Below, in pieces: positions 1 to 63,579 of a DNA stretch of 64,000 nucleotides (positions within the stretch are counted from its first letter, which is position 1; each line of letters opens with the position of its first letter). A program made the position numbers and the translations under genes. The notes beneath the pieces were generated by a model. That model did not search any database. It had not been told where the DNA came from and was given only the letters and a program-made list of their open reading frames with translations. The DNA lies in the sequence record LC592711.1. One strand, written 5' to 3'.

Positions 1-62
1 TTCAAGAGCGCTGGCGGTGTAGCTATTTTCTTTTTATAAAGGAGATTGGCACCTAGCATATG

Positions 63-671
63 TCACCACGCATTATAGCCAGAAGGAAGCGGATATGTCA
101 GTCCGGTTCCAGTCAGCAAGTTAGCCGAACTATTGCTACCAGTTGCAGCCGCTCCCGAGATCATCGGATAGAAAGTCGTAGCCGATGAATAAGGTGTATA
201 ATCAAACGAGTTAAACGCAACCCCGTTTTTATAAAACTTCATGGTCTTGGCCGTCAGATCCATAGCGACGCCAATGACGTCGTTGAGCCAGGCATAAGTA
301 CCATACGAAAAACGTTGTGCTGTTCCGTAAAGCAACGCAGATACGTTCGACGTGTAGCTATAGAGAAGCAGTTCACCGGGACCACCCTGGTTCCATGGAT
401 GAAAGAGTCCAGTCGTCGACGGAGCAACTCCAATGCCAGGAGTGTAGCCCCCACTACCAGATTCGATTCCAGTAATCTTGACTTCGAAATACCATTTTCC
501 TGAAGAACGAGCAATCGTTCCTCGTACCGATCCACCAATGGTCGAATCGAATGTAACTGTTTTATTTCCATTGGACAACGTTACGCCAGAAGCATACATG
601 TCGCTAGGATTCAGAGTCAGAGTCGATGACTGGACTACAGACTTCTTATAAAGAAGTAACGGGTCATGCAT
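63..671 (-). CDS. SPRY/B30.2-like beta-sandwich (lectin-like) protein, probable virion fibre/decoration tip
   Basis: SPRY-type motifs 'SGKWYFEVKI', 'IGVA', 'DVIGVAMDL...MKFYKNG', 'FYPMIS'. The ATG at 671 is preferred over the GTG at 683. N-terminal MHDPLLLYKKSV tag is shared with 686-1366 and 62341-63000. Confidence 0.65.
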   Translation of the reverse strand: MHDPLLLYKKSVVQSSTLTLNPSDMYASGVTLSNGNKTVTFDSTIGGSVRGTIARSSGKWYFEVKITGIESGSGGYTPGIGVAPSTTGLFHPWNQGGPGELLLYSYTSNVSALLYGTAQRFSYGTYAWLNDVIGVAMDLTAKTMKFYKNGVAFNSFDYTPYSSATTFYPMISGAAATGSNSSANLLTGTGLTYPLPSGYNAW

Positions 672-685
672 AATTTTCACCAAAC

Positions 686-1366
686 TTAAATCAGTCCACC
701 AACAGGCGGTGTAAAGTTAGCCGTAATGATTGCAGAATCCCAGAATCCCCATTCGGCCGTATAAACGTTTATACCAGACTGACCAACAATCATGCTGTTG
801 TTGTTTATGATAGACGTACTGTCTGAGAAGTTGGCATAGGTATAGGAAGAACCAGTGCCATTTGCTAGCATGATTGCAGTACCGTTTATGTAAACGGTAT
901 TTACATTGGCCTTTCGCATAAATGCGATATGGTACCACGCTGTCGACATCTGGCCTTCAGTCACACTGGCATCCCAGCATGTGGCGATGGTCGACATGGC
1001 ATAGCCGAACTGCAGTCGATTACCGAAACCGTTGTCGCCGGTTCGGATATTAAACGCACTGCTCATTATCGTTACATAGCCGGTTGCGCCGACCAGTAAT
1101 ACTCGAAGAATTGCAGTGAAGTCAGCAGTACTGGTCCGACTTCCATTAGCATAATTGATCGTATCAACGCCCTTCATCGCAGTCGTATAACCAGAGAGCG
1201 AAATAGGAGGCGTTACAATCGCACCTGCGGCAGCAGTGTGGTTCGTGGGAGTGATCTTTCCAGTCGACGAATTGCTGCTGTAATTATAACCCCACAGAGG
1301 CTGAATGGAGTTGAGACCACCGCCACCCGACACTGCTTTCTTTTTTAAAAGCATCGGTGATAACAT
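686..1366 (-). CDS. Concanavalin-A/LamG-like lectin domain protein, probable virion fibre/decoration tip
   Basis: LamG-like 'DFTAILRV', 'WYHIAFMRKANVNTVYING', terminal 'ANFTPP'. G/S/T/N-rich. Start at ATG 1366 gives MLSPMLLKKKAV. Confidence 0.65.
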   Translation of the reverse strand: MLSPMLLKKKAVSGGGGLNSIQPLWGYNYSSNSSTGKITPTNHTAAAGAIVTPPISLSGYTTAMKGVDTINYANGSRTSTADFTAILRVLLVGATGYVTIMSSAFNIRTGDNGFGNRLQFGYAMSTIATCWDASVTEGQMSTAWYHIAFMRKANVNTVYINGTAIMLANGTGSSYTYANFSDSTSIINNNSMIVGQSGINVYTAEWGFWDSAIITANFTPPVGGLI

Positions 1367-1410: not shown

Positions 1411-1436
1411 CCTACCTAGCCGAAAGGCTAGGTAGG
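1411..1436. terminator. 11-bp stem hairpin downstream of the DNA polymerase gene
   Basis: cctacctagcc-gaaa-ggctaggtagg; no U-tract. Confidence 0.6.
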
Positions 1437-10958: not shown

Positions 10959-12266
10959 TTACGCGACCAGTTTCAAACGTTTTGCATTCGAGCGACGACA
11001 GAGCTCCGTCAGGAATGCATCCGGATCTTCCGGGTTTTCCTTGAATGCGAGTTCTACTTCGCAACCAGGTAGCAACCATTCTTCCGAATGACACGACAGA
11101 ATAAACCGTCGTACTTCTTCATCTGTGAGATCGTACATCAGCGCCATGTAAGGCTCGATCTCTTTGCTCGTGAGTTCGCCGATCAGGTAATCCTTATCGA
11201 CCCGACCTGCGCGCTTGATAGCTTCATCGAGATCTTCCGGATGATTGGTCGTCATGATGACGATCAGGTTATCCAATCCGATTACTCCATCAAACGCATT
11301 GAGTACACCAGACATGGTGAGGAAGCTCAGGTCCGCTACTGCCTCGACCAGTTCCTTTTTCTTTTTGCGATCCTTCACTGCACTGCCTGACTGATCGACA
11401 TCCTCAATGAGAACGATCGAACCAGGTTTGATGGTCGCCAATGCTTCCATGAGCGAAGCATTTGAATGCTGCGACAGATCGAGCAAATACAGATCTTTCT
11501 TGAAACGAGCAGAAAGCAGCTTCGACAGCGTCGTCTTGCCAGTACCCGGGGGTCCGTAAAAGAGGAACGAAATTTTGTATGTCAGTCCTTTTTTACGATA
11601 CCACTCTCGACGATTTGAGAATTCTTCAATCCTTCCCAAGATGTCGGCCTTCAGGTCTGCGTTCATGCAAAACGTTTCGATGTCTCGCATGGGAACCTTA
11701 CCAACCTGCTCCCAGCTTTTATCGCCACCGTACTTGTGGATGAATACTTCGTCGGAAGCACCTCGCTTTTCATTGAAGAGATCGACCAGTTGCAGGAATG
11801 AACTTTGATTCCATCCAAACGTGCGGATGGTGATTTCTTCTTTCTGTTTTTCAGATCCGCCAGATTCCAGAGAACCTTTATCGAACCAGAAGAACTTTCG
11901 TTTGTACCAGAAAACATGAACGCCTTTGCCGATACCCAAGCGGTAAGGCTTGAATACGGTTTCATCCGAAAACATGTCTTCCTTGTATTGCCGGAACATG
12001 AAGAAGCTACGACTGAATTTCGCGTAGCCGGACATCATGAACCATTTGTCAAACATGTTGTACGCATCTGCATTGCCGTCCCAACCAGCATTGTTCAGAC
12101 GCATCGTAACTGTCGTGTAGCGAACGACCAGATCCCAGAACTTCTTGGGTAGGTCCTTCAGGTAAAACATGATACCGCCAACCAACGGCAGTACCAGCGT
12201 CGCTAAGAGAGGGTTAGCTTTCGTTGCTGCATCGTAGTGGCCAAAGAGCCCATAGATCCAGTCCAT
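10959..12266 (-). CDS. BCS1-like membrane-anchored AAA+ ATPase
   Basis: Walker A GPPGTGKT, Walker B IVLIED, 'MSGVLNAFDG', SRH 'MTTNHPEDLDEAIKRAGRVD', BCS1-type pre-Walker 'EEF...REWYRKKGLTYK'; N-terminal TM 'LLATLVLPLVGGIMFYL'. Start at ATG 12266 (GGGGA RBS). Confidence 0.8.
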   Translation of the reverse strand: MDWIYGLFGHYDAATKANPLLATLVLPLVGGIMFYLKDLPKKFWDLVVRYTTVTMRLNNAGWDGNADAYNMFDKWFMMSGYAKFSRSFFMFRQYKEDMFSDETVFKPYRLGIGKGVHVFWYKRKFFWFDKGSLESGGSEKQKEEITIRTFGWNQSSFLQLVDLFNEKRGASDEVFIHKYGGDKSWEQVGKVPMRDIETFCMNADLKADILGRIEEFSNRREWYRKKGLTYKISFLFYGPPGTGKTTLSKLLSARFKKDLYLLDLSQHSNASLMEALATIKPGSIVLIEDVDQSGSAVKDRKKKKELVEAVADLSFLTMSGVLNAFDGVIGLDNLIVIMTTNHPEDLDEAIKRAGRVDKDYLIGELTSKEIEPYMALMYDLTDEEVRRFILSCHSEEWLLPGCEVELAFKENPEDPDAFLTELCRRSNAKRLKLVA

Positions 12267-20327: not shown

Positions 20328-22928
20328 TTAGGTGATAGCTTTCAAACGGAGGAAGTGGTTGAGCACAACCTTGCCCTTCATGTAAACCTGAATCACGTAG
20401 GACAGGAAGTTGTAGTAGTAGATGTCGATGTCGATCACGTTCTCCAGGAAATGCGGAGTGATGAGAACGTAATTCGGATCAACAGCCGTTGCAGTCTGTG
20501 TCGGGTCAAATGCCAACAGCCATTCGTAAGGCGCGCAGAGCTGCTTCACGAAGTCCATGTTGTATTGAACCTTCAACTGATTGATGTCAATCGTCCCCGC
20601 CAGGCAGTCATACATGATTTTGCACAGGAACGGAGAGAAGACCGGATACAGATCCGGAATGACATCGGGACCACTCGGAGTAGGCTCCGGCAGTTTTGCA
20701 GAGAGGTAATCGCTTACCGCTTTGTCGATTACACGCGCATCATCACGCCAGCTGTACGTGTCACCATTCGTGAGAGAGCGCATCGGAACGATCATGTCAC
20801 GCACCGAATACGGTTCACCGTTGTTGCCATCGGGAACAGCCACAAGCGCATCGTTTTCCGAGAAGAGCAGATCATCGCGATGACGCAGTCGACCATCCAC
20901 GAGAATACGCATGACGCGATCGTCTCGCAGATTGAAGATCGAGTTGCGCGAAAGCAAGTCGTACTTCAGGAAGCCATTGTCTTCAGGAAGCTGGCGCGTC
21001 AGATCGCTCTTGCAGAAGCCCGAGAAGCGAACAGCGATTTGCTGAGGCTGGTTAGCCGGATCCACGAGATACTTCTTGTTACAGATCACAACCTTCGGCC
21101 ATTGAACGAAGTAGTCCAGCTTTTCAGTCAGACCACGAGCATTCAGCATGATGTCCAGTTCGCCCATCGGCACATCCATTGCCTGGCTGCCGCTTACGCC
21201 GTTCTTCGTCACGATCTTGATCAGATCGAATTCGATAACGCCATCGGGGAACATCTGGGTGATCATGTACCCGAGCGAGTTCTTATCCGAACGAACCAGT
21301 GTCGAGTAGTTATTCATGTTGATGAGCCAGGTCAGCTGGTTGTTGATAACCGAGTACTGACCGGATCCAGTTACGTCCTTCCAGTTGTTCTGAAGAACAC
21401 CGCCGATCTTGTCGCAGACGTACATGCGATAGTTCAGCGTCGGATCCAACGTTTGATTCTTGGTGTCGTAGACTTCGTCGATCGACTGAGCCGTATGACC
21501 GTAGATGGCTTCCACGAGCGCGCAGGACTGGTTCTGTACCACGTATTGGTCGCCCACGTCATGCAGGTACCAACCGAGCAACAGACCGTCGCTATCGTAC
21601 TCATAGCACGTTGCGTTCTCGTACATGCCTTGTGGCAGATTCACCATCTTCACGCCGTTAACCGTCACGACCTTCAGAGGCGTATCGCCCAGCACCTTCG
21701 ACACAGCGTTGTAACCCAGTGCCGACTGAACCATGTCACGTGTGATCAGCTGATCGTTCGGTTGACCATTTTGCGTACTGTTGGTCAGACGCATGATCTT
21801 CGTGTAGTCGGAAGCTTCGAGAACAGCTGCTTGCCAGTTCGACACAGTGGCGTTATCGCCAATCATTGCAGGCAGGAAGTCACTCTCGTGCAACTTGTAC
21901 AGTTCGTGGATCCGGTTCTTCTCATAAACGAGAGGGCGGTTATAACCACTCTCACGAATCAGAGCAAGAACACGGCATTGCTGGGGATCGGTCCAACCCG
22001 GCTTCCCATCCACGAATGCATTGATGAGCTGAACGCTCATCGAGTAGTCTTTGTGCGTCACCATTCGCATGGCCGCTGCGGTGTTCTTGTGGTGATACAC
22101 CCCGTTCGGTTTGGCAGGAGAAGCCGGCCGCTGGATCAGGAAGAGATCCACGTCATCCTGATATTCGATCCTGGTCATCGCATCGGAATAGTGGAGCAGA
22201 TACTTACGCTCACTATCCAGAGTGGAATCGAATGTAGGCAGGCTCGATACGGGATACTCGACAACCTTGGTCACCGATGCATCGTAGAACCATTCCACCA
22301 GGTCGCCTACTTTGCAGGTAATCGGGCTGATTTCTTCTGCCCAGTAGCCGTTGATGATCGCGTAAGCGTAACCAGCTTTCGCGCGGTACTGGTTGAACCT
22401 CGTCTGCATCGCGAGAATGTCAGTCATCATCAAAGGCGACTTACCATCAGCCACGATCGATTCAGTGTAGCCTTGGCTACGAGCCGATTGCCAGAACGCA
22501 TTCGTGTAAACGCGGAAAAAAATATCTTCCGTGTTGTAGTCCACGTTCAGCAGCTTGTCTTCTTTCTTGGTTGCGATGATGAGGTTCTTCGACTTCGTCA
22601 CCATGTAGTAGGTTTCGAACTTCGGAAGCAGCACACCCTTTTCAGTGTAAGCCTCAGCAACCATCCCCATCTTGTTGCACACGTCCAGGAAGCTGACCCA
22701 CTGGTTCTGCACCGGGAACAACCCGAAGTAGTCCGGATGAATCTGCCCAACCTGATAGACGTGGTAGTAATGCGTGTTGTCGGGAAGGTAGATCTGGAGC
22801 CAGTCCAGTTCCAGCTTCACGTACTCACCGCCAAATTGGCTGATCCGCTTGGGACGGGCACGGAACTGTTTGTCCTGCCTCGGTGAGCACCAAAAATTCT
22901 TCAGTGCATAATCGACAAGGTAATCCAT
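20328..22928 (-). CDS. Virion structural protein (phiKZ gp27-like)
   Basis: 866 aa; 'MDYLVDYALKNFWCSPRQDKQ' start typical of the family; synteny. Confidence 0.75.
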   Translation of the reverse strand: MDYLVDYALKNFWCSPRQDKQFRARPKRISQFGGEYVKLELDWLQIYLPDNTHYYHVYQVGQIHPDYFGLFPVQNQWVSFLDVCNKMGMVAEAYTEKGVLLPKFETYYMVTKSKNLIIATKKEDKLLNVDYNTEDIFFRVYTNAFWQSARSQGYTESIVADGKSPLMMTDILAMQTRFNQYRAKAGYAYAIINGYWAEEISPITCKVGDLVEWFYDASVTKVVEYPVSSLPTFDSTLDSERKYLLHYSDAMTRIEYQDDVDLFLIQRPASPAKPNGVYHHKNTAAAMRMVTHKDYSMSVQLINAFVDGKPGWTDPQQCRVLALIRESGYNRPLVYEKNRIHELYKLHESDFLPAMIGDNATVSNWQAAVLEASDYTKIMRLTNSTQNGQPNDQLITRDMVQSALGYNAVSKVLGDTPLKVVTVNGVKMVNLPQGMYENATCYEYDSDGLLLGWYLHDVGDQYVVQNQSCALVEAIYGHTAQSIDEVYDTKNQTLDPTLNYRMYVCDKIGGVLQNNWKDVTGSGQYSVINNQLTWLINMNNYSTLVRSDKNSLGYMITQMFPDGVIEFDLIKIVTKNGVSGSQAMDVPMGELDIMLNARGLTEKLDYFVQWPKVVICNKKYLVDPANQPQQIAVRFSGFCKSDLTRQLPEDNGFLKYDLLSRNSIFNLRDDRVMRILVDGRLRHRDDLLFSENDALVAVPDGNNGEPYSVRDMIVPMRSLTNGDTYSWRDDARVIDKAVSDYLSAKLPEPTPSGPDVIPDLYPVFSPFLCKIMYDCLAGTIDINQLKVQYNMDFVKQLCAPYEWLLAFDPTQTATAVDPNYVLITPHFLENVIDIDIYYYNFLSYVIQVYMKGKVVLNHFLRLKAIT

Positions 22929-22997: not shown

Positions 22998-23897
22998 TTA
23001 CGACTTCAGCGTTGCGGTGATTTGCAGCAGGAAGTCGTCAGCCGAGTTCTTCGCCGGTACCCGTTCGATCATCCTGGAAAGCTGCGAACGGTGATACGCA
23101 CGCTCCGACATCGCAGCCGTGATCATGGCCAGGAATGTCGGTACGTGTTCGACGGAACACGCTACGATCTCGTGTCCATTGGCGCTGAACCAAGTCGAGT
23201 TGAGAATCGGATACAACACGATGGAGCTGAAGTTCTTCAGACGGATGTTGCCAACCACGTCTTCAGCACGCTCGCAAAAGTCCGTGATGTCCTTCACGTA
23301 GTCCTGACCATCCAGGACCTGCATGATCGCATCGGCGCCGATTCGCGTCGCTTTTGCAATACCCTGACAGATCTTAAGATAGTCACGTTCGTCCGGCTTT
23401 TCGCTGTTATCGAACAGCGAATAGTAGAACCACGCCGAGAAGATCGTCAGCTTGTACTGATCCTCTGGCTCCAGGCCGAAACGTCGACTGATGTTTTCGC
23501 TCAGCCAGGAGGAATAAACACTTGCCGGAAGAGGGCTCATCGCGCGGAAAAGCGTCGGGGGTTCCGAGCGCCACACCGCTTCCAGACCGGCGCGCGCCAA
23601 AAGCAGATTGTAGTCCGCCTGCGAATTGATCTTCAATTCACCACTCTGACGGTTCTTCGTAACGAAGTGCCGAGCGTCGACATACAGACCATCGTATGGA
23701 TGCTTTTCGACGTACAGAGGGTGTGAAAATGCAGGGATGTCGACCGGCCATTCCGAACTGTCTTCGATGACAGTATAGCCAGCGTCATTTTTTGCAAGAT
23801 AATTTGATACCGTTGCTTTTACGAGTGCCGCTTGAGTCGGCTCGGTGTGGTATCGGCGGCCGAAAGTGGTGTCGTACGCTGAAAGAAAAACAGGCAT
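22998..23897 (-). CDS. Virion structural protein (phiKZ gp28-like)
   Basis: 299 aa; divergent from the sheath gene as in phiKZ. Confidence 0.7.
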   Translation of the reverse strand: MPVFLSAYDTTFGRRYHTEPTQAALVKATVSNYLAKNDAGYTVIEDSSEWPVDIPAFSHPLYVEKHPYDGLYVDARHFVTKNRQSGELKINSQADYNLLLARAGLEAVWRSEPPTLFRAMSPLPASVYSSWLSENISRRFGLEPEDQYKLTIFSAWFYYSLFDNSEKPDERDYLKICQGIAKATRIGADAIMQVLDGQDYVKDITDFCERAEDVVGNIRLKNFSSIVLYPILNSTWFSANGHEIVACSVEHVPTFLAMITAAMSERAYHRSQLSRMIERVPAKNSADDFLLQITATLKS

Positions 23898-30562: not shown

Positions 30563-31345
30563 TTACAACTTCTTGGTGTTGATCAGTTCGAAGAAGTTAC
30601 GCTTCGCTTGTGGCGTGTCGCGCACTTCCCAACCCAATGCACCCATGAGTGCATCGAGCGGAACGGATACCGATTCGTTCGAACCGGGACGTTGACGGAT
30701 GTTGCGTGCCGATTGACGAACCGCGCCTTCCGTGAAGATCTTGCTGGAGTGAGCTTCCAGCGACGGCGAGTCGTACTTCGTGGCCATGGCGATGCCAGGC
30801 TCGTTCACGTAGTCGAACGTGACGACGTGTTTCATCTCCTTGATGATCCGGCCACCGACGCGATGAGGCATCGAGAAGCAACGAATCGAGAAGCACACGT
30901 TTTCACTGCCGTTGTTGATCTGCTTGTCCAGTGCATCACCATACGGACCGGACGGAGCCACCGCAGACATGATGCCCACGATAGGACGGCCTTGACCATC
31001 CTTGTAGTGATCGAAGTCCAGGTAGATCTTCTTGTGATGACAGCAAGCCGACTTTTCGTCGATGCGCAGGAGACGTTCAACGAACTTGTCGTCCGATTGA
31101 CCCGTTTCCTGATTGGGGTGGCCATACTCACCACGCAATACGCCCTTCGATGCCATGCGAACGAGATCGCTCGCTTCGGTGAAGAACTTCTTGCCGTAGT
31201 TGTAGTCGTAGAACTCACCCTTGTTGTTTGTCATGTTCAGGGCGCCCACGATCATGTCGTAGTACCCGTCACTGTTTTTCTTGAGCGTGCCGGCAGCGTT
31301 CCGACCATTCAGAACCTGACAGCTAAACTCCACGGCGCCTTGCAT
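30563..31345 (-). CDS. Prohead (head maturation) protease (phiKZ gp175-like)
   Basis: 'LRGEYGHP' (catalytic His), 'CFSIR' (Ser), 'TFDYVNEPG'; C-terminal 'PSLE' self-cleavage-type site. Confidence 0.88.
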   Translation of the reverse strand: MQGAVEFSCQVLNGRNAAGTLKKNSDGYYDMIVGALNMTNNKGEFYDYNYGKKFFTEASDLVRMASKGVLRGEYGHPNQETGQSDDKFVERLLRIDEKSACCHHKKIYLDFDHYKDGQGRPIVGIMSAVAPSGPYGDALDKQINNGSENVCFSIRCFSMPHRVGGRIIKEMKHVVTFDYVNEPGIAMATKYDSPSLEAHSSKIFTEGAVRQSARNIRQRPGSNESVSVPLDALMGALGWEVRDTPQAKRNFFELINTKKL

Positions 31346-60335: not shown

Positions 60336-61637
60336 ATGAATACCATCAAAGGCTTTGCTCTCAATCGCAACTTCGTCAACAACGCTCCAGGCGTCGTTGC
60401 TGATATCGGCGAGCTTTCACAGCTGGGTTATACCTTCGCCAAGGAACCCAGGGTGTACTCCTCGCAGACATATCCCACATTATCACTGGTCCACATGCCG
60501 ACCAAGGGTAGTGGCGTGGGTTTCTCTGCTGCCATTCCGGACGATCAGGTCGCACACATCCTGAACGTCATCAACAACATTTACACGAAGTCGCTCAGCA
60601 ATACGAATCCGATTGCTCCGGGTGAATTCGTGACCTACCTCCAGAACCAGATGGGCGCCGCTGTGGCAAACATCACGGTCGGTGGTCAGGTGATTTCGGG
60701 CAACCGCTCCATCGTCGAATGGATCCAGTGGAACAACCCCGCAGTCGACAACACCAACATCAACAAGGTCTGGTTCGTCAACTCGTCTTTCGAAGGTCAG
60801 TTCGACGAATACGACTTTACAGTCATTCCGCCGTTCACGCCCGTCAGCCAGTTCTTCGGCCAACCCGCTGACGTGAAAGCACTTCTCGCTTCGCGCAACT
60901 ACAATCAGCAAACGCAGGCTATCGAAGATGCGCGTGGTGGTACGAACGAGTCGTTCGTCTGGGGTAACGAATACAACTACGTGAACCCGGTGAACGCCAA
61001 CGACAAGACGCCTGCGAAGTTTGCTGTGCTCGGTTATGGCGAAGCTGCGAACAACATCGACCTGATCAAGCAAGCGATCGTCGATTACCTGCTCACCAAC
61101 TCCACGCAAACGCGAGATCAGTGGAAGGCAATTTTGCCTGACCTTTTTTTGCGTACGGAGGTGATGCTGTTCCCCCAGTGGGGGTCGTTCGCGATTGAGA
61201 ATGTGGTCGGTGGCAACAACGGCATCTATTCGCCGATTCAGTTGCTCTCGTCGATCCTGACTCAGATCACGAACGACGCAACGGGTTACGACCCAACCTT
61301 CGTGCAGAACAACGCACAGATCTTCACGTTCCCGTATATGTCGATTGCAATCGGCTCGTGCGGCAATGCAGAAAACCGTGACGGCAAGACGAAGCTCTCG
61401 GACTGGTTCCCGGATTACTTCTTCACCCCCAACACGTCGGCGGACTTCAACCGCATGTCTCTCGACACGCAGGGCTGGTTCCAGATGATGATGGCGATGC
61501 TACCGATTGCCCGTGACATGACTTCGGGCTCCACGGTTCCCAACGGTTATACGCGAGTGATTCGCGGCACGAAGATGTATCTCGCTAAGAGCTACGACGA
61601 CGTGCAGTTCCTCGTGCAAGCACAGGCGACTCCGTAA
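60336..61637 (+). CDS. Virion structural protein
   Basis: 433 aa; 'GELSQLGYTFAKE', 'WKAILPDLFLRTE', 'DFNRMS' recall a conserved family protein near sbcC. Confidence 0.65.
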   Translation: MNTIKGFALNRNFVNNAPGVVADIGELSQLGYTFAKEPRVYSSQTYPTLSLVHMPTKGSGVGFSAAIPDDQVAHILNVINNIYTKSLSNTNPIAPGEFVTYLQNQMGAAVANITVGGQVISGNRSIVEWIQWNNPAVDNTNINKVWFVNSSFEGQFDEYDFTVIPPFTPVSQFFGQPADVKALLASRNYNQQTQAIEDARGGTNESFVWGNEYNYVNPVNANDKTPAKFAVLGYGEAANNIDLIKQAIVDYLLTNSTQTRDQWKAILPDLFLRTEVMLFPQWGSFAIENVVGGNNGIYSPIQLLSSILTQITNDATGYDPTFVQNNAQIFTFPYMSIAIGSCGNAENRDGKTKLSDWFPDYFFTPNTSADFNRMSLDTQGWFQMMMAMLPIARDMTSGSTVPNGYTRVIRGTKMYLAKSYDDVQFLVQAQATP

Positions 61638-62272
61638 TGGCAACTGAACTCCTACCTGGCATTGGGGCTTCGGGGGATTGGACCCTCAAGCCTCCTTACG
61701 ATTCCAAGTACACCGCTGGTCTCGCTTACAGCTGTCGGGCGATCAACAAGATCAGTTCCATGGTGGCCACGGGTATTGACGTTCTGAATACCCTTTTCAT
61801 CCCGGCCGGCTTGGCGGAAGCCGATTACGATGCGGCAGTGGTGGCGGACCTTTCGATGGTTACGCTGCAATCCGCAGCGGGTCAGCTGATCATCCTGCCT
61901 TCGACGTATCTGGCAGGATGGCCCAGTGGGGACTCCGTACCTTACGCTGTCGTGGGTATGGTGATCAATCTCGGTCCGATTCCGAACACGATCGATCCGA
62001 CCTTCCTCACGGCGAAGGTTGAGCCTGTCATCAAGAACGCTCTGGGCCTGGACCCCGAGATCCATTACGTTACGTTGTCGGAGACGACCAACAAGACGTG
62101 GGACGATCACGTGGCTCAGGAGAACACACGCACTGCTGCAATCACGGATGGCAATTCGGATTACATCAAGCGTCTGAATGCCGAGGCTGCTTTGACGGCA
62201 GCACAAGCCCAGATCGCAGCACTACAGCAAGTCATCATCGATGCTGGTTTGACCATCCCGACAAGCTCATAA
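61637..62272 (+). CDS. Virion structural protein
   Basis: 211 aa, coupled (TAATG); C-terminal coiled coil. Confidence 0.65.
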   Translation: MATELLPGIGASGDWTLKPPYDSKYTAGLAYSCRAINKISSMVATGIDVLNTLFIPAGLAEADYDAAVVADLSMVTLQSAAGQLIILPSTYLAGWPSGDSVPYAVVGMVINLGPIPNTIDPTFLTAKVEPVIKNALGLDPEIHYVTLSETTNKTWDDHVAQENTRTAAITDGNSDYIKRLNAEAALTAAQAQIAALQQVIIDAGLTIPTSS

Positions 62273-62284
62273 ACGAAAAAGACT

Positions 62285-62310
62285 CTACTGCTGGCTTCGG
62301 CCAGCAGTAG
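62285..62310 (+). terminator. 11-bp hairpin with a cUUCGg loop
   Basis: ctactgctggc-ttcg-gccagcagtag. Confidence 0.7.
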
Positions 62311-62340
62311 TGATCTTGTGAATTTAGAATAGAGGCGTAT

Positions 62341-63000
62341 ATGCAAACCGCGATGCTTTTAAAAAAGAAAGCAGCTATAGGGGTGCTGACCAATCTGTTA
62401 ATGCCGTTTGACGGAAATTTCACAGATCTGGCAGGTAATACTGGCATCACCCAAGCCAACTATAGTTTCTTGACAAACCAGAAGTTCGGACAACAGGCAG
62501 TCAAGTTCGGATCGAATGGCGGCGTGACTGTTCCGCTAACATCGAAAATCACTTATGCTGGCGATTTCACAATCGAGACATGGGTATCGATGGGATCGCT
62601 AACCGGCGAGCAGATGCTGATTACTGCTGGGGCTGGGTGTTACATCGACTGCTATACGGGCGGTGCCTATAACGGAGGCGCTCCATGTTTTATTGTTTCG
62701 ATCAATCCGACGAATAGTCATGCGTCAATGATTGTCGTTGGCAATAGCTGGACAGTTGGGACACTCCATCACCTGGCACTTTGTCGCTCGGGCTCAACCG
62801 TAACTTTGTACGGCGACGGGGCGGTGAAGGGAACAGTGACCAATACCAACGTGTGGGCGAATTCAAACTGGACGATCGGCAACTACACGTCGTCTCCGCT
62901 CTACGGTTTCTCTGGCGGTGTTCAGCAAGTTCGAGCATCGAATGTCTGCCGCTATACCGGACCATTCACGCCGCCGTCTAGCCCGTTCGTTCTCGATTAA
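62341..63000 (+). CDS. Concanavalin-A/LamG-like lectin domain protein, probable fibre/decoration tip
   Basis: 'GDFTIETWV', 'LHHLALCRSGSTVTLYGDG', 'QQVRASNVCRYTGPFTPP'; MQTAMLLKKKAA tag. Confidence 0.75.
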   Translation: MQTAMLLKKKAAIGVLTNLLMPFDGNFTDLAGNTGITQANYSFLTNQKFGQQAVKFGSNGGVTVPLTSKITYAGDFTIETWVSMGSLTGEQMLITAGAGCYIDCYTGGAYNGGAPCFIVSINPTNSHASMIVVGNSWTVGTLHHLALCRSGSTVTLYGDGAVKGTVTNTNVWANSNWTIGNYTSSPLYGFSGGVQQVRASNVCRYTGPFTPPSSPFVLD

Positions 63001-63013
63001 GTGAAGGCAGAAT

Positions 63014-63544
63014 ATGCAAGCACTCGCAAAGATATCCGGCACTTGGAAAATTGTTAGACAGATCTTCGTCAAACAAGGCGGAGTCTGGAAAACAGTCAAG
63101 CAGGGCTACATCAAAAGTGGAGGAGTCTGGAAACTCTTCTTCACACTGGGTTTTACCGCTCAGCCACAAACCTTCGTTCTCAGTAGTCATGCGGCTAGTA
63201 CCGATCTTGCTGAAATTAGTTTAACCGGCATGGGGGTTACGGATCACGGAGCGCTTCTCTCCGATCTGTTCATGTCGCAAAATTACGATAGTGGCGATGA
63301 GAACAGTGTAACGTCGTGGACATATCGAATGATGTACGATTCTTCGTCTGCGCCGCCTAGTTGGAGTGGGAATCTGAAAGTAACCAACCTGAGCTCAGGT
63401 ATTTCTGTAACGCTGTCGCCCACAGCGGACCCCAGAACGTGGTTGCTTCAAATTCCCAGCGATGGTAGTCAGACGTATCCGGTTAGTCCTTACGACAAAT
63501 GGATACGTGATTCGATGGATACCTATTCAATCAGTGAAGCATAA
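63014..63544 (+). CDS. Tail-fibre-associated protein with three N-terminal K-x-G-x-WK repeats
   Basis: 'KISGTWK', 'KQGGVWK', 'KSGGVWK' with 14-aa spacing. Confidence 0.6.
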   Translation: MQALAKISGTWKIVRQIFVKQGGVWKTVKQGYIKSGGVWKLFFTLGFTAQPQTFVLSSHAASTDLAEISLTGMGVTDHGALLSDLFMSQNYDSGDENSVTSWTYRMMYDSSSAPPSWSGNLKVTNLSSGISVTLSPTADPRTWLLQIPSDGSQTYPVSPYDKWIRDSMDTYSISEA

Positions 63545-63551
63545 AGACATA

Positions 63552-63579
63552 GACTACTCTCCCGTAAGGGAGAGTAGTC
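63552..63579. terminator. 12-bp hairpin at a convergent junction
   Basis: gactactctccc-gtaa-gggagagtagtc. Confidence 0.7.

What the first reader, a model, noticed from the sequence alone, without database searches (positions are those of the whole stretch)
63..1366. Three lectin-like proteins at two loci about 61 kb apart share a 12-residue N-terminal tag (modular receptor-binding cassette?)
Seen: MHDPLLLYKKSV (SPRY-like, 63-671), MLSPMLLKKKAV (LamG-like, 686-1366) and MQTAMLLKKKAA (LamG-like, 62341-63000). The consensus M-x-x-[PA]-[ML]-L-L-[KY]-K-K-[AS]-[VA] is fused to different beta-sandwich bodies of about 200-225 aa. These genes also look more AT-rich than the core structural genes. Inference: the tag docks interchangeable carbohydrate-binding heads onto a common virion scaffold, giving a plug-and-play host-range system. 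More members probably lie left of position 1.
Basis: partly seen in the sequence, partly recalled or inferred. Interest (0 to 1): 0.7.

Follow-up and report, generated by a model that had tools for sequence, protein, structure and literature searches.

The report
Shared N-terminal tag on phage lectins
A giant bacteriophage of plant-pathogenic Burkholderia and Ralstonia encodes at least ten small sugar-binding-type proteins of several different folds that all begin with the same loose 12-residue peptide, which most likely fixes them to one site on the phage's baseplate, although this has not been shown.

Summary
The window is bases 1-64000 of Burkholderia phage FLC6, a phiKZ-like jumbo phage of genus Chiangmaivirus.

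- **Extent.** The window holds four tags, not three. The fourth starts at base 59 on the minus strand; its body lies at the other end of the record. The whole genome holds at least ten tagged genes, perhaps twelve, at five or six loci.
- **Translation.** The tag is translated. Orthologues change its codons but keep its residues.
- **Position.** It occurs only at N-termini. The strict core is found 6 times, all at N-termini, against 0.06 expected.
- **Structure.** It lies outside the fold as a low-confidence arm in AlphaFold2 models. It heads LamG, SPRY and discoidin bodies and, in a weaker form, a glycine-rich one.
- **Variability.** Cassette content differs in every relative examined.
- **Neighbours.** Two loci adjoin baseplate genes (homologues of phiKZ gp157/gp161 and gp139/gp128). 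Distant SPRY relatives sit in tail-fibre clusters.

A docking address for interchangeable heads is the best reading (about 0.45). No proteomic or structural evidence places these proteins in virions. I rate it a new variant of a known kind, namely receptor-binding paralogues that share an N-terminal anchor.

The parts
1..59 (-). N-terminal piece of a fourth tagged gene, annotated as FLC6 gp241. The ATG is at 59, the tag occupies 24-59, and the ORF runs off position 1. The LamG body lies at record positions 226463-227105, outside the window. The gene is split only by the record's linearisation point.
   Evidence: The intact 234-aa orthologue SURPRISE13_001 matches this piece over residues 1-15 (11/15 identical). 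It matches the record-end piece over residues 22-234 at 70% identity. Pfam calls the body Laminin_G_3, E 6.8e-13.
63..671 (-). gp1, a 202-aa SPRY-domain protein. The tag is at 636-671.
   Evidence: phrog_10080 aligned from residue 6. AlphaFold2 mean pLDDT is 90.3, with residues 1-3 and 5-8 below 50. Orthologues keep the tag.
686..1366 (-). gp2, 226 aa, weakly LamG-like. The tag is at 1331-1366. The deposited annotation starts at GTG 1333, inside the tag.
   Evidence: Five orthologues all begin at the same ATG, with synonymous changes in the Leu and Lys codons.
1411..1436 (-). GC-rich hairpin with an 11-bp stem and a TTTC loop. It lies between the stop of the DNA polymerase gene and gp2, so the tagged block looks like a separate transcription unit.
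   Evidence: Read directly. The terminator scan did not flag it because no T-run follows.
60336..62272 (+). Neighbours gp59 and gp60. They are homologues of phiKZ gp157 (outer baseplate ring) and gp161 (inner baseplate 'horn').
   Evidence: PDB 9xqd_J, E 3.3e-56; 9xqs_E, E 1.4e-21; 11lx_n 'Inner Baseplate Protein gp187'. The roles are described in PMC13250141.
62285..62310 (.). Hairpin with an 11-bp stem between gp60 and gp61.
62341..63000 (+). gp61, a 219-aa LamG (Laminin_G_3) protein. The tag is at 62341-62376. The deposited annotation starts at ATG 62401, 20 codons downstream.
   Evidence: Twelve homologues at about 40-67% identity keep the tag. AGAGG lies 5 nt upstream of the ATG. LamG-repeat proteins align only from residue 9 at the earliest, mostly 12-17, onward.
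63014..63544 (+). gp62, the partner gene of gp61. It has a different N-terminal module (three G-x-W-K repeats of about 14 aa) on a globular body, and it recurs beside tagged LamG genes.
   Evidence: phrog_25859; gp87 beside gp88; RsoM3USA, RSL2, RSF1.

Best explanation
FLC6 carries a dispersed family of small single-domain proteins of about 160-250 aa. Their bodies have carbohydrate-binding-type folds: LamG/ConA-like, SPRY, discoidin and, in a weaker member, glycine-rich. All begin with the same roughly 12-residue peptide, which is unstructured on its own.

The peptide is most likely an assembly address. It would bind one kind of site on the virion, probably in the peripheral baseplate or fibre network, as an extended peptide that becomes ordered on a partner. 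Many different heads could then hang on a common scaffold. Gain, loss and exchange of whole head genes would vary what the particle can bind.

**Shown:**
- the tag exists and is translated;
- it is found only at N-termini, at a fixed distance from Met1;
- it lies outside the fold;
- it heads at least three unrelated folds;
- cassette content varies between relatives;
- some loci adjoin baseplate genes.

**Inferred:** incorporation into virions, the docking site, sugar binding, and any role in host recognition.
For: **1. The constraint is on the protein.**
- Within orthologue sets the Leu and Lys codons of the core vary synonymously while the residues stay the same.
- Paralogous tags use different codons.
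- Among 30 tags: L at position 6 in 29, L at 7 in 27, K or Y at 8 in 27, K at 9 in 29, K at 10 in 25.

**2. The tag is only N-terminal.**
- A position-weight scan of 4863 candidate starts puts the six family members that the matrix was built from at the top.
- Members that were not used to build the matrix score next: gp88 24.7, gp198 19.0, gp89 14.3, gp199 7.0, against a background of -28.5 +/- 8.2.
- No internal site scores above 8.8, apart from off-by-one re-reads of N-terminal members.

**3. The tag lies outside the fold.**
- In the gp1 model (mean pLDDT 90.3), residues 1-3 and 5-8 are below 50 and the first strand starts at residue 20.
- The gp61 tag has pLDDT 24-31.
- Multi-LamG proteins align from residue 9 at the earliest, mostly 12-17.

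**4. The bodies differ.** They are SPRY, Laminin_G_3, F5/8 type C and, in a weak member, glycine-rich.

**5. Gene neighbourhood.**
- gp61 follows homologues of phiKZ gp157 and gp161.
- gp100-102 follow homologues of phiKZ gp139, gp128 and the portal. phiKZ itself has its fibre paralogues near that position.
- gp65 follows a spike-domain protein.

**6. Cassette turnover between gp60 and the SbcC gene**:
- FLC6 has one tagged LamG plus one G-x-W-K protein.
- SURPRISE13 has three tagged LamG genes.
- A metagenomic relative has four.
- RSF1 has two G-x-W-K proteins and no tagged gene.
- RSL2 has a tagged gene on the opposite strand.

**7. Relatives elsewhere.**
- Distant small SPRY relatives sit between tailspike, collagen-like fibre and pectate-lyase genes in three of three contexts read.
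- The SPRY fold recurs at the ends of annotated tail-fibre and minor-tail proteins.

**8. Precedent in the same phage group.**
- The phiKZ fibre paralogues gp131, gp133, gp134 and gp135 share N-terminal segments that dock at the baseplate (PMC13250141).
- In Goslar, a disordered peptide is predicted to dock on a neighbouring subunit by extending a beta-sheet, building baseplate filaments that carry carbohydrate-binding domains (PMC13742148).
Against: - No virion proteomics or cryo-EM density for any tagged protein was found. The RSL2/RSF1 proteomics paper is not held, and the FLC6 and SURPRISE13 papers report none.
- Three loci lie beside the DNA polymerase, a radical-SAM/oxygenase block and the thymidylate kinase gene, not beside structural genes.
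- No docking partner was identified.
- phiKZ has no detectable homologue of the tagged proteins, so its structural atlas says nothing about them directly.
- Twelve residues is very short for a stable anchor.
- SPRY domains are also protein-binding modules, so an intracellular role is possible.
Confidence: 0.45

Rival explanations
1. The tag addresses the proteins to a shared partner that is not part of the virion. Candidates are a phage or host protein in the infected cell, such as a chaperone, an oligomerisation partner, or a site such as the phage-nucleus surface. The beta-sandwich heads would then act inside the cell or at lysis.
For: - Three of the five or six loci adjoin replication or nucleotide-metabolism genes.
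- Similar small LamG genes lie in the replication module of Salmonella phage SPLA5a and at the genome start of the nucleus-forming Serratia phage PCH45.
- SPRY domains are classic protein-binding modules.
- The fixed distance of the core from Met1 suits recognition of a nascent or free N-terminus.
Against: - LamG_3, discoidin and glycine-rich domains in phages are mostly found in tail and baseplate proteins (PMC7824862).
- Two loci adjoin baseplate genes.
- Distant SPRY relatives lie in fibre clusters.
Confidence: 0.2
2. The peptide has no address function. It would be an inherited 5' gene segment spread by duplication and by recombination between cassettes, kept partly because an A-rich, Lys-coding start favours translation initiation.
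For: - The gp2 and gp61 tags share 23 identical bases, with nothing alike elsewhere in the window. That is enough to serve as a recombination joint.
- AAA/AAG codons dominate the core.
- Four of twelve tagged starts have the same TATG context, against 5.8% of starts genome-wide.
Against: - All other tag pairs use different codons.
- The hydrophobic Leu-Leu pair, which has no obvious role in initiation, is the most conserved part.
- The tag survives down to about 40-50% body identity, and across unrelated folds that cannot share ancestry in their bodies.
Confidence: 0.15
3. The tag is a packaging signal that sends the proteins into the capsid for ejection into the host, like the capsid targeting sequence of the T4 internal proteins.
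For: The formal pattern is the same: a short N-terminal peptide shared by small, variable proteins scattered over plastic regions of a large phage genome. This comparison rests on my knowledge of T4 and was not tested here. The phage has a phiKZ-type prohead protease (Peptidase_S80) and internal head proteins.
Against: - By inspection the tags are not followed by the small-residue-x-Glu cleavage motif known for phiKZ-type prohead proteases (from my knowledge of that family).
- Lectin-type folds fit an exposed location better.
- The tagged proteins gave no match to the phiKZ internal-head-protein family.
Confidence: 0.08
4. The deposited starts are right. The tags of gp2 and gp61 would then be untranslated, and the similarity would be a DNA or RNA signal.
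For: The FLC6 record starts gp2 at 1333 and gp61 at 62401. The 23-base identity is noted above.
Against: - The upstream ATG is conserved in every orthologue and in independent gene calls.
- Substitutions in the tag are synonymous at the core.
- In RsoM3USA and SURPRISE13 the tagged ATG abuts or overlaps the preceding stop codon, so it is the only plausible start.
- AGAGG lies 5 nt before ATG 62341, and no such site precedes 62401.
Confidence: 0.02

Closest known systems
phiKZ tail-fibre paralogues gp131, gp133, gp134 and gp135 (PMC13250141)
   Same: Same phage group. Several paralogues share an N-terminal part that docks at the peripheral baseplate, and they differ in the distal part thought to bind the host.
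   Different: There the shared part is a folded N-terminal domain plus a helix that forms a six-helix bundle. Here it is about 12 loose residues. No sequence relation was found. Here the genes are scattered over five or six loci and have at least three unrelated folds.
Goslar DUF7941 baseplate filaments (PMC13742148)
   Same: Specific to chimalliviruses. Carbohydrate-binding domains are hung on a baseplate-anchored network, and docking is predicted to occur when a disordered peptide extends a neighbour's beta-sheet.
   Different: The docking peptide there is an internal linker of a DUF7941 protein. In FLC6 nothing like the tag occurs internally, and no DUF7941 match was obtained. The Pfam copy used may lack that model.
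Capsid targeting sequence of the T4 internal proteins (from my knowledge of T4; not tested here)
   Same: A portable N-terminal peptide of about 10 residues shared by small, variable proteins. The genes lie in plastic regions.
   Different: The T4 signal sends proteins inside the head and is cut off by the prohead protease. Here no cleavage motif follows the tag, and the folds suggest an exposed, binding role.
Separately encoded fibre-tip adhesins and branched tailspike sets, such as T2/S16 gp38 and the tailspikes of Ackermannviridae (from my knowledge)
   Same: Receptor-binding heads are encoded as separate genes and attach through their N-terminal parts. Exchange of heads changes what is bound.
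   Different: Those anchors are folded domains of tens to hundreds of residues, and the genes are clustered.

Membership tests
Pfam SPRY (PF00622) | The profile match reaches the gathering score. | tested here: met
   gp1 scores 35.5 bits against a cut-off of 26.3. The AlphaFold2 beta-sandwich has pLDDT 90. A profile of the family matches solved SPRY domains at E 3.5e-26. gp199 passes (32.6 bits). gp198 is just below (25.3 bits).
Pfam Laminin_G_3 (PF13385), ConA-like | The profile match reaches the gathering score. | tested here: met
   gp61 57.2 bits, gp88 49.1 and the gp241 body 49.5, against a cut-off of 27.6. The fold search returns ConA-like, pentraxin and CBM sandwiches.
Pfam Laminin_G_3 (PF13385): gp2, gp101 and gp102 | The profile match reaches the gathering score. 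| tested here: inconclusive
   gp2 scores 20.8 bits and gp101 22.1 bits, both below the cut-off. gp102 has no match. hhalign probabilities are 39% and 19%. PHROG 3545 matches gp2 (7e-8) and gp101 (3e-19).
phiKZ gp131-type fibre paralogues | A shared folded N-terminal domain homologous to that of gp131. | tested here: not met
   Profiles of the gp61 and gp1 families find no phiKZ fibre chain in the PDB. Only about 12-20 residues precede the lectin fold.
Chimallivirus DUF7941 proteins | A DUF7941 module, made of an N-terminal globular domain plus a docking linker. | tested here: inconclusive
   No such Pfam match in the tagged proteins or in 30 neighbouring proteins. The model may not be in the Pfam copy used.
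T4-type capsid targeting sequence | An N-terminal peptide followed by a prohead-protease cleavage site, with the protein found inside heads. | tested here: not met
   By inspection, no Glu-containing cleavage motif follows the tag. Location in heads cannot be tested with these tools.
Sec, Tat or lipoprotein signal peptides | A basic n-region, a hydrophobic core of 10 or more residues, and a cleavage site or lipobox Cys. | tested here: not met
   By inspection, only 2-3 hydrophobic residues come before K-K-K. Polar or Gly-rich sequence follows, and there is no Cys.
   No accessible proteomic data cover these proteins.

The most novel reading that the evidence does not exclude
The tag is a minimal, portable address of about 12 residues. 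A nucleus-forming jumbo phage would use it to mount proteins of any fold on the outside of its baseplate or fibre network. It would be an external counterpart of the T4 capsid targeting sequence, recognised by one still unidentified receptor pocket that co-evolves with it across Chiangmaivirus and its relatives.
Probability: 0.3. Interest if true: 0.75.

Novelty: new variant of a known kind. Interest (0 to 1): 0.55.

Why it matters
If the tag is an assembly address, it defines a very small peptide-receptor pair in the still poorly resolved outer baseplate of chimalliviruses. It would explain how these phages carry many sugar-binding modules without long fibre genes. It would also give a simple sequence marker for finding such accessory heads in jumbo-phage genomes, where they are now annotated as hypothetical, truncated or missed.

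There is a practical result whatever the mechanism. Several deposited gene starts and products in FLC6, RSL2 and RsoM3USA need correction.

Tried and rejected
**Readings tested and rejected.**
- *DNA or RNA element.* The 23-base identity between the gp2 and gp61 tags is unique to that pair. Other tags use other codons.
- *Programmed -1 frameshift.* TT-A-AAA-AAG is in phase in gp2, gp61 and gp198. RSL2, gp1, gp101 and gp102 lack the heptamer, and by my own reading the -1 frame stops after about 20 codons. It is a by-product of the Lys codons.
- *Signal peptide or lipobox.* There is no hydrophobic core and no Cys.
- *Prohead-protease propeptide.* No cleavage motif follows the tag.
- *Copy of an internal docking linker.* No internal tag-like site exists anywhere in the phage.

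**Searches that led nowhere.**
- *A DUF7941 partner.* Pfam scans of 30 neighbouring and structural proteins found none.
- *PDB sequence search with the LamG family.* No hit. The fold search gave only generic ConA-like sandwiches.
- *FLC9 as a second tagged lineage.* Its LamG is the C-terminal domain of a 562-aa protein and has no tag.
- *Virion proteomics.* The RP31 data concern a phage without these genes. The RSL2/RSF1 paper is not held.
- *Sigma-70 promoter and terminator scan.* Nothing useful beyond the hairpins.

- The AlphaFold2 model of gp61 is only moderate (pLDDT 61, nine sequences).
I record it here.
Full report
**Identity of the window.** The window is identical to positions 1-64000 of Burkholderia phage FLC6 (LC592711.1, 227,105 bp, genus Chiangmaivirus). 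This is a phiKZ-like jumbo phage. Its close relatives are FLC8, FLC4-4C/5C/11C, RSL2, RSF1, RsoM3USA and SURPRISE13. It has the marks of a nucleus-forming phage:
- a divergent family-B DNA polymerase with its SH3 partner;
- split multisubunit RNA polymerases;
- a chimallin homologue, outside the window.

To scan beyond the window I read the rest of the record.

**The observation.**
- gp1 (63-671, minus strand) is a SPRY protein.
- gp61 (62341-63000, plus strand) is a Laminin_G_3 protein.
- gp2 (686-1366, minus strand) matches Laminin_G_3 only below Pfam's cut-off.
- Apart from the tag, the three proteins have no significant pairwise similarity. The tag is the top local alignment in every pair.

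**The deposited record differs on two starts.** It begins gp2 at GTG 1333 and gp61 at ATG 62401, so two of the three tags are not annotated as coding. The longer reading is right, for four reasons.
- All orthologues begin at the same ATG.
- The Leu and Lys codons of the core vary synonymously while the residues stay the same.
- In RsoM3USA and SURPRISE13 the tagged ATG abuts or overlaps the preceding stop codon.
- Independent gene calls in metagenomes start at the tag.

**The family is larger than reported.** A fourth tag lies in the window. An ATG at base 59 on the minus strand, three bases after the stop of gp1, opens an ORF that runs off position 1. The far end of the record carries a LamG body whose reading frame is open to the last base. 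The intact 234-aa orthologue in SURPRISE13 matches both pieces, compared apart. The gene is therefore whole in the phage and is split only by where the record was cut.

Genome-wide scans add these members:
- gp101 and gp102;
- gp198 and gp199, both SPRY, with the gp199 start again annotated too far downstream;
- gp88, a LamG protein;
- gp89, a discoidin (F5/8 type C) protein;
- weaker variants on gp100 (glycine-rich domain) and gp65 (fold unknown).

That makes at least ten members, perhaps twelve, at five or six loci. The bodies have at least three unrelated folds.

**Statistics.**
- The strict core occurs 6 times in 94,934 residues of long ORF products, always within the first 12 residues. 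Shuffles give 0.06.
- In a weight-matrix scan of 4863 candidate starts, members not used to build the matrix score 7 to 25, against a background of -28.5 +/- 8.2.
- No internal site in any long ORF scores above 8.8, apart from off-by-one re-reads of N-terminal members.

Shares by column among 30 tags from FLC6, four relatives and metagenomic homologues:

| Position | Shares |
|---|---|
| 1 | M 30 |
| 2 | Q 14, L 11, H 4 |
| 3 | E 12, D 6, A 6 |
| 4 | A 14, P 7, S 6 |
| 5 | M 10, L 9, N 6 |
| 6 | L 29 |
| 7 | L 27 |
| 8 | K 18, Y 9 |
| 9 | K 29 |
| 10 | K 25 |
| 11 | A 10, S 6 |
| 12 | V 9, A 8, I 4, S 4 |

**Where the tag sits in the protein.**
- The AlphaFold2 model of gp1 is confident (mean pLDDT 90.3). 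Residues 1-3 and 5-8 are below 50, and the first strand starts at residue 20.
- The gp61 model is moderate (mean 60.8), with the tag at 24-31.
- A profile search of 1.84 billion representatives found thousands of LamG-repeat proteins. These align to gp61 from residue 9 at the earliest, mostly from 12-17 onward. The few single-domain relatives align from residue 1 or 3 and keep a tag variant.

The tag is thus a free arm outside the fold, in two different folds.

**Surroundings.**
- gp61 follows gp59 and gp60. These are homologues of phiKZ gp157 (a ring of 18 dimers in the outer baseplate, the platform for fibre attachment) and gp161 (the 'horn' of the inner baseplate).
- gp100-102 follow homologues of phiKZ gp139, gp128 and the portal gp129.
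- gp65 follows a spike-domain protein.
- The other loci adjoin the DNA polymerase (gp2, gp1, gp241), a radical-SAM/oxygenase block (gp88, gp89) and the true thymidylate kinase (gp198, gp199).
- GC-rich hairpins separate the tagged blocks from the genes upstream.

**Turnover between relatives.** The slot between gp60 and the SbcC-like gene holds different contents in each phage:

| Phage | Contents of the slot |
|---|---|
| FLC6, RsoM3USA | one tagged LamG plus one G-x-W-K-repeat protein |
| SURPRISE13 | three tagged LamG genes |
| a metagenomic relative | four tagged LamG genes |
| RSF1 | two G-x-W-K proteins, no tagged gene |
| RSL2 | a tagged gene on the opposite strand plus a G-x-W-K protein |

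Downstream of the polymerase, RsoM3USA has four tagged genes in a row and SURPRISE13 has two.

**Relatives further away.**
- Small LamG proteins with a degenerate version of the tag (the hydrophobic pair kept, the lysines lost) occur in Serratia phage PCH45 and Salmonella phage SPLA5a.
- Small SPRY proteins from metagenomes carry other short hydrophobic N-terminal arms. In the three contexts read they lie among tailspike, collagen-like fibre and pectate-lyase genes, and their start abuts or overlaps the stop of the upstream gene.
- Structure comparison finds the same fold at the ends of annotated tail-fibre and minor-tail proteins.

**Interpretation.** The best reading is that the tag is an assembly address that mounts interchangeable binding heads on a common site of the virion, probably the peripheral baseplate or fibre network. 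The logic has precedent in the same phage group.
- The phiKZ fibre paralogues share N-terminal segments that dock under gp130 (PMC13250141).
- Goslar is proposed to build baseplate filaments that carry carbohydrate-binding domains, with a disordered peptide docking on the next subunit (PMC13742148).

Three things are unusual here. The shared part is only about 12 residues. It sits at the very N-terminus. It serves at least three folds encoded at scattered loci.

I could find no proteomic or structural evidence that these proteins are in particles. I identified no partner, and three loci are not near structural genes. I therefore put this reading at about 0.45. The rivals are:
- an address to a partner that is not part of the virion (0.2);
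- a functionless inherited 5' segment that doubles as a recombination joint and an initiation context (0.15);
- a head-packaging signal of the T4 kind (0.08);
- non-translation (0.02).

**Novelty.** The published accounts of FLC6 and SURPRISE13 list some of these genes only as concanavalin A-like proteins. The passages I read do not mention the shared N-terminus, and the comparative jumbo-phage survey notes LamG and SPRY lectin domains in general terms. The principle of a shared anchor with variable heads is known. This form of it appears not to have been described, so I rate it a new variant of a known kind.

- The same protein was later included in a PHROG scan. I record this as a possible slip.
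The two pieces of the gene that spans the record ends were compared apart.

Noticed in passing
window 63014-63544 (+); also FLC6 86686-87375 (-), L018 2536-3624, L019 3288-3839, L020 5204-5731: This is a second kind of N-terminal module: three tandem units of about 14 residues with G-x-W-K. It heads small proteins (gp62, gp87; phrog_25859 and phrog_36019), and the gp87 body has a weak ILEI (lectin-like) match. These genes sit next to tagged LamG genes. RSF1 has two of them in the slot where FLC6 has a tagged gene.
   Followed up: partly
window 1333-1355 (-) and 62352-62374 (+): The gp2 and gp61 tags share 23 identical bases, although the genes are otherwise unalignable. This could mark a recent exchange or a recombination joint. 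No other tag pair shows it.
   Followed up: yes
window 56-59, 668-671, 1363-1366 (all minus strand) and 62338-62341 (plus strand): All four tagged starts in the window read TATG, against 5.8% of 207 starts genome-wide. The eight tagged or tag-like genes outside the window do not. TATG overlapping the transcription start is the only conserved element of phiKZ late promoters (PMC7598289), but a transcript starting at its G would lack the AUG. Unexplained.
   Followed up: partly
window 686-1366, 62341-63000; FLC6 185972-186574; FLC6 185398-185970 and 186643-187338: These look like annotation errors in the deposited record. The starts of gp2, gp61 and gp199 are set downstream of the tag. 'Putative thymidylate kinase' is attached to the SPRY protein gp198, while the protein with the thymidylate kinase domain is gp200.
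   Followed up: yes
L007 1451-2104 (-); L019 2519-3205 (-); L008 66-674 and 688-1359 (-): Tagged genes are missed or truncated in relatives' records. RsoM3USA annotates a 258-nt ORF on the opposite strand instead of a 217-aa tagged gene. RSL2 annotates fragments of 129, 273 and 108 nt where intact ORFs of 228, 202 and 223 aa are present.
   Followed up: partly
window 10959-12266 (-): gp18 is a BCS1-like AAA ATPase (BCS1_N plus AAA domains). BCS1 moves folded proteins across a membrane in mitochondria, so its role in a nucleus-forming phage would be worth a look.
   Followed up: no
window 1411-1436, 62285-62310, 63552-63579: Perfect GC-rich hairpins of 11-12 bp with four-base loops (TTTC, TTCG/CGAA, GTAA/TTAC) lie between genes. 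Only some are followed by a T-run. They are likely the phage's own terminators or RNA-stability elements.
   Followed up: partly
window 22998-23897 (-), 30563-31345 (-), 20328-22928 (-): These are clear homologues of the phiKZ vertex-binding protein gp28, the S80 prohead protease, and DUF7193 (the phiKZ gp27-type baseplate scaffold). All are annotated only as hypothetical or virion structural proteins.
   Followed up: no
L012 10001-11345: In a temperate phage contig, the small SPRY protein and the next gene begin with loosely similar arms of hydrophobic, basic, then hydrophobic residues, just after a pectate-lyase-type tailspike gene. This hints that short shared N-terminal arms on fibre-associated proteins may be more widespread.
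   Followed up: no
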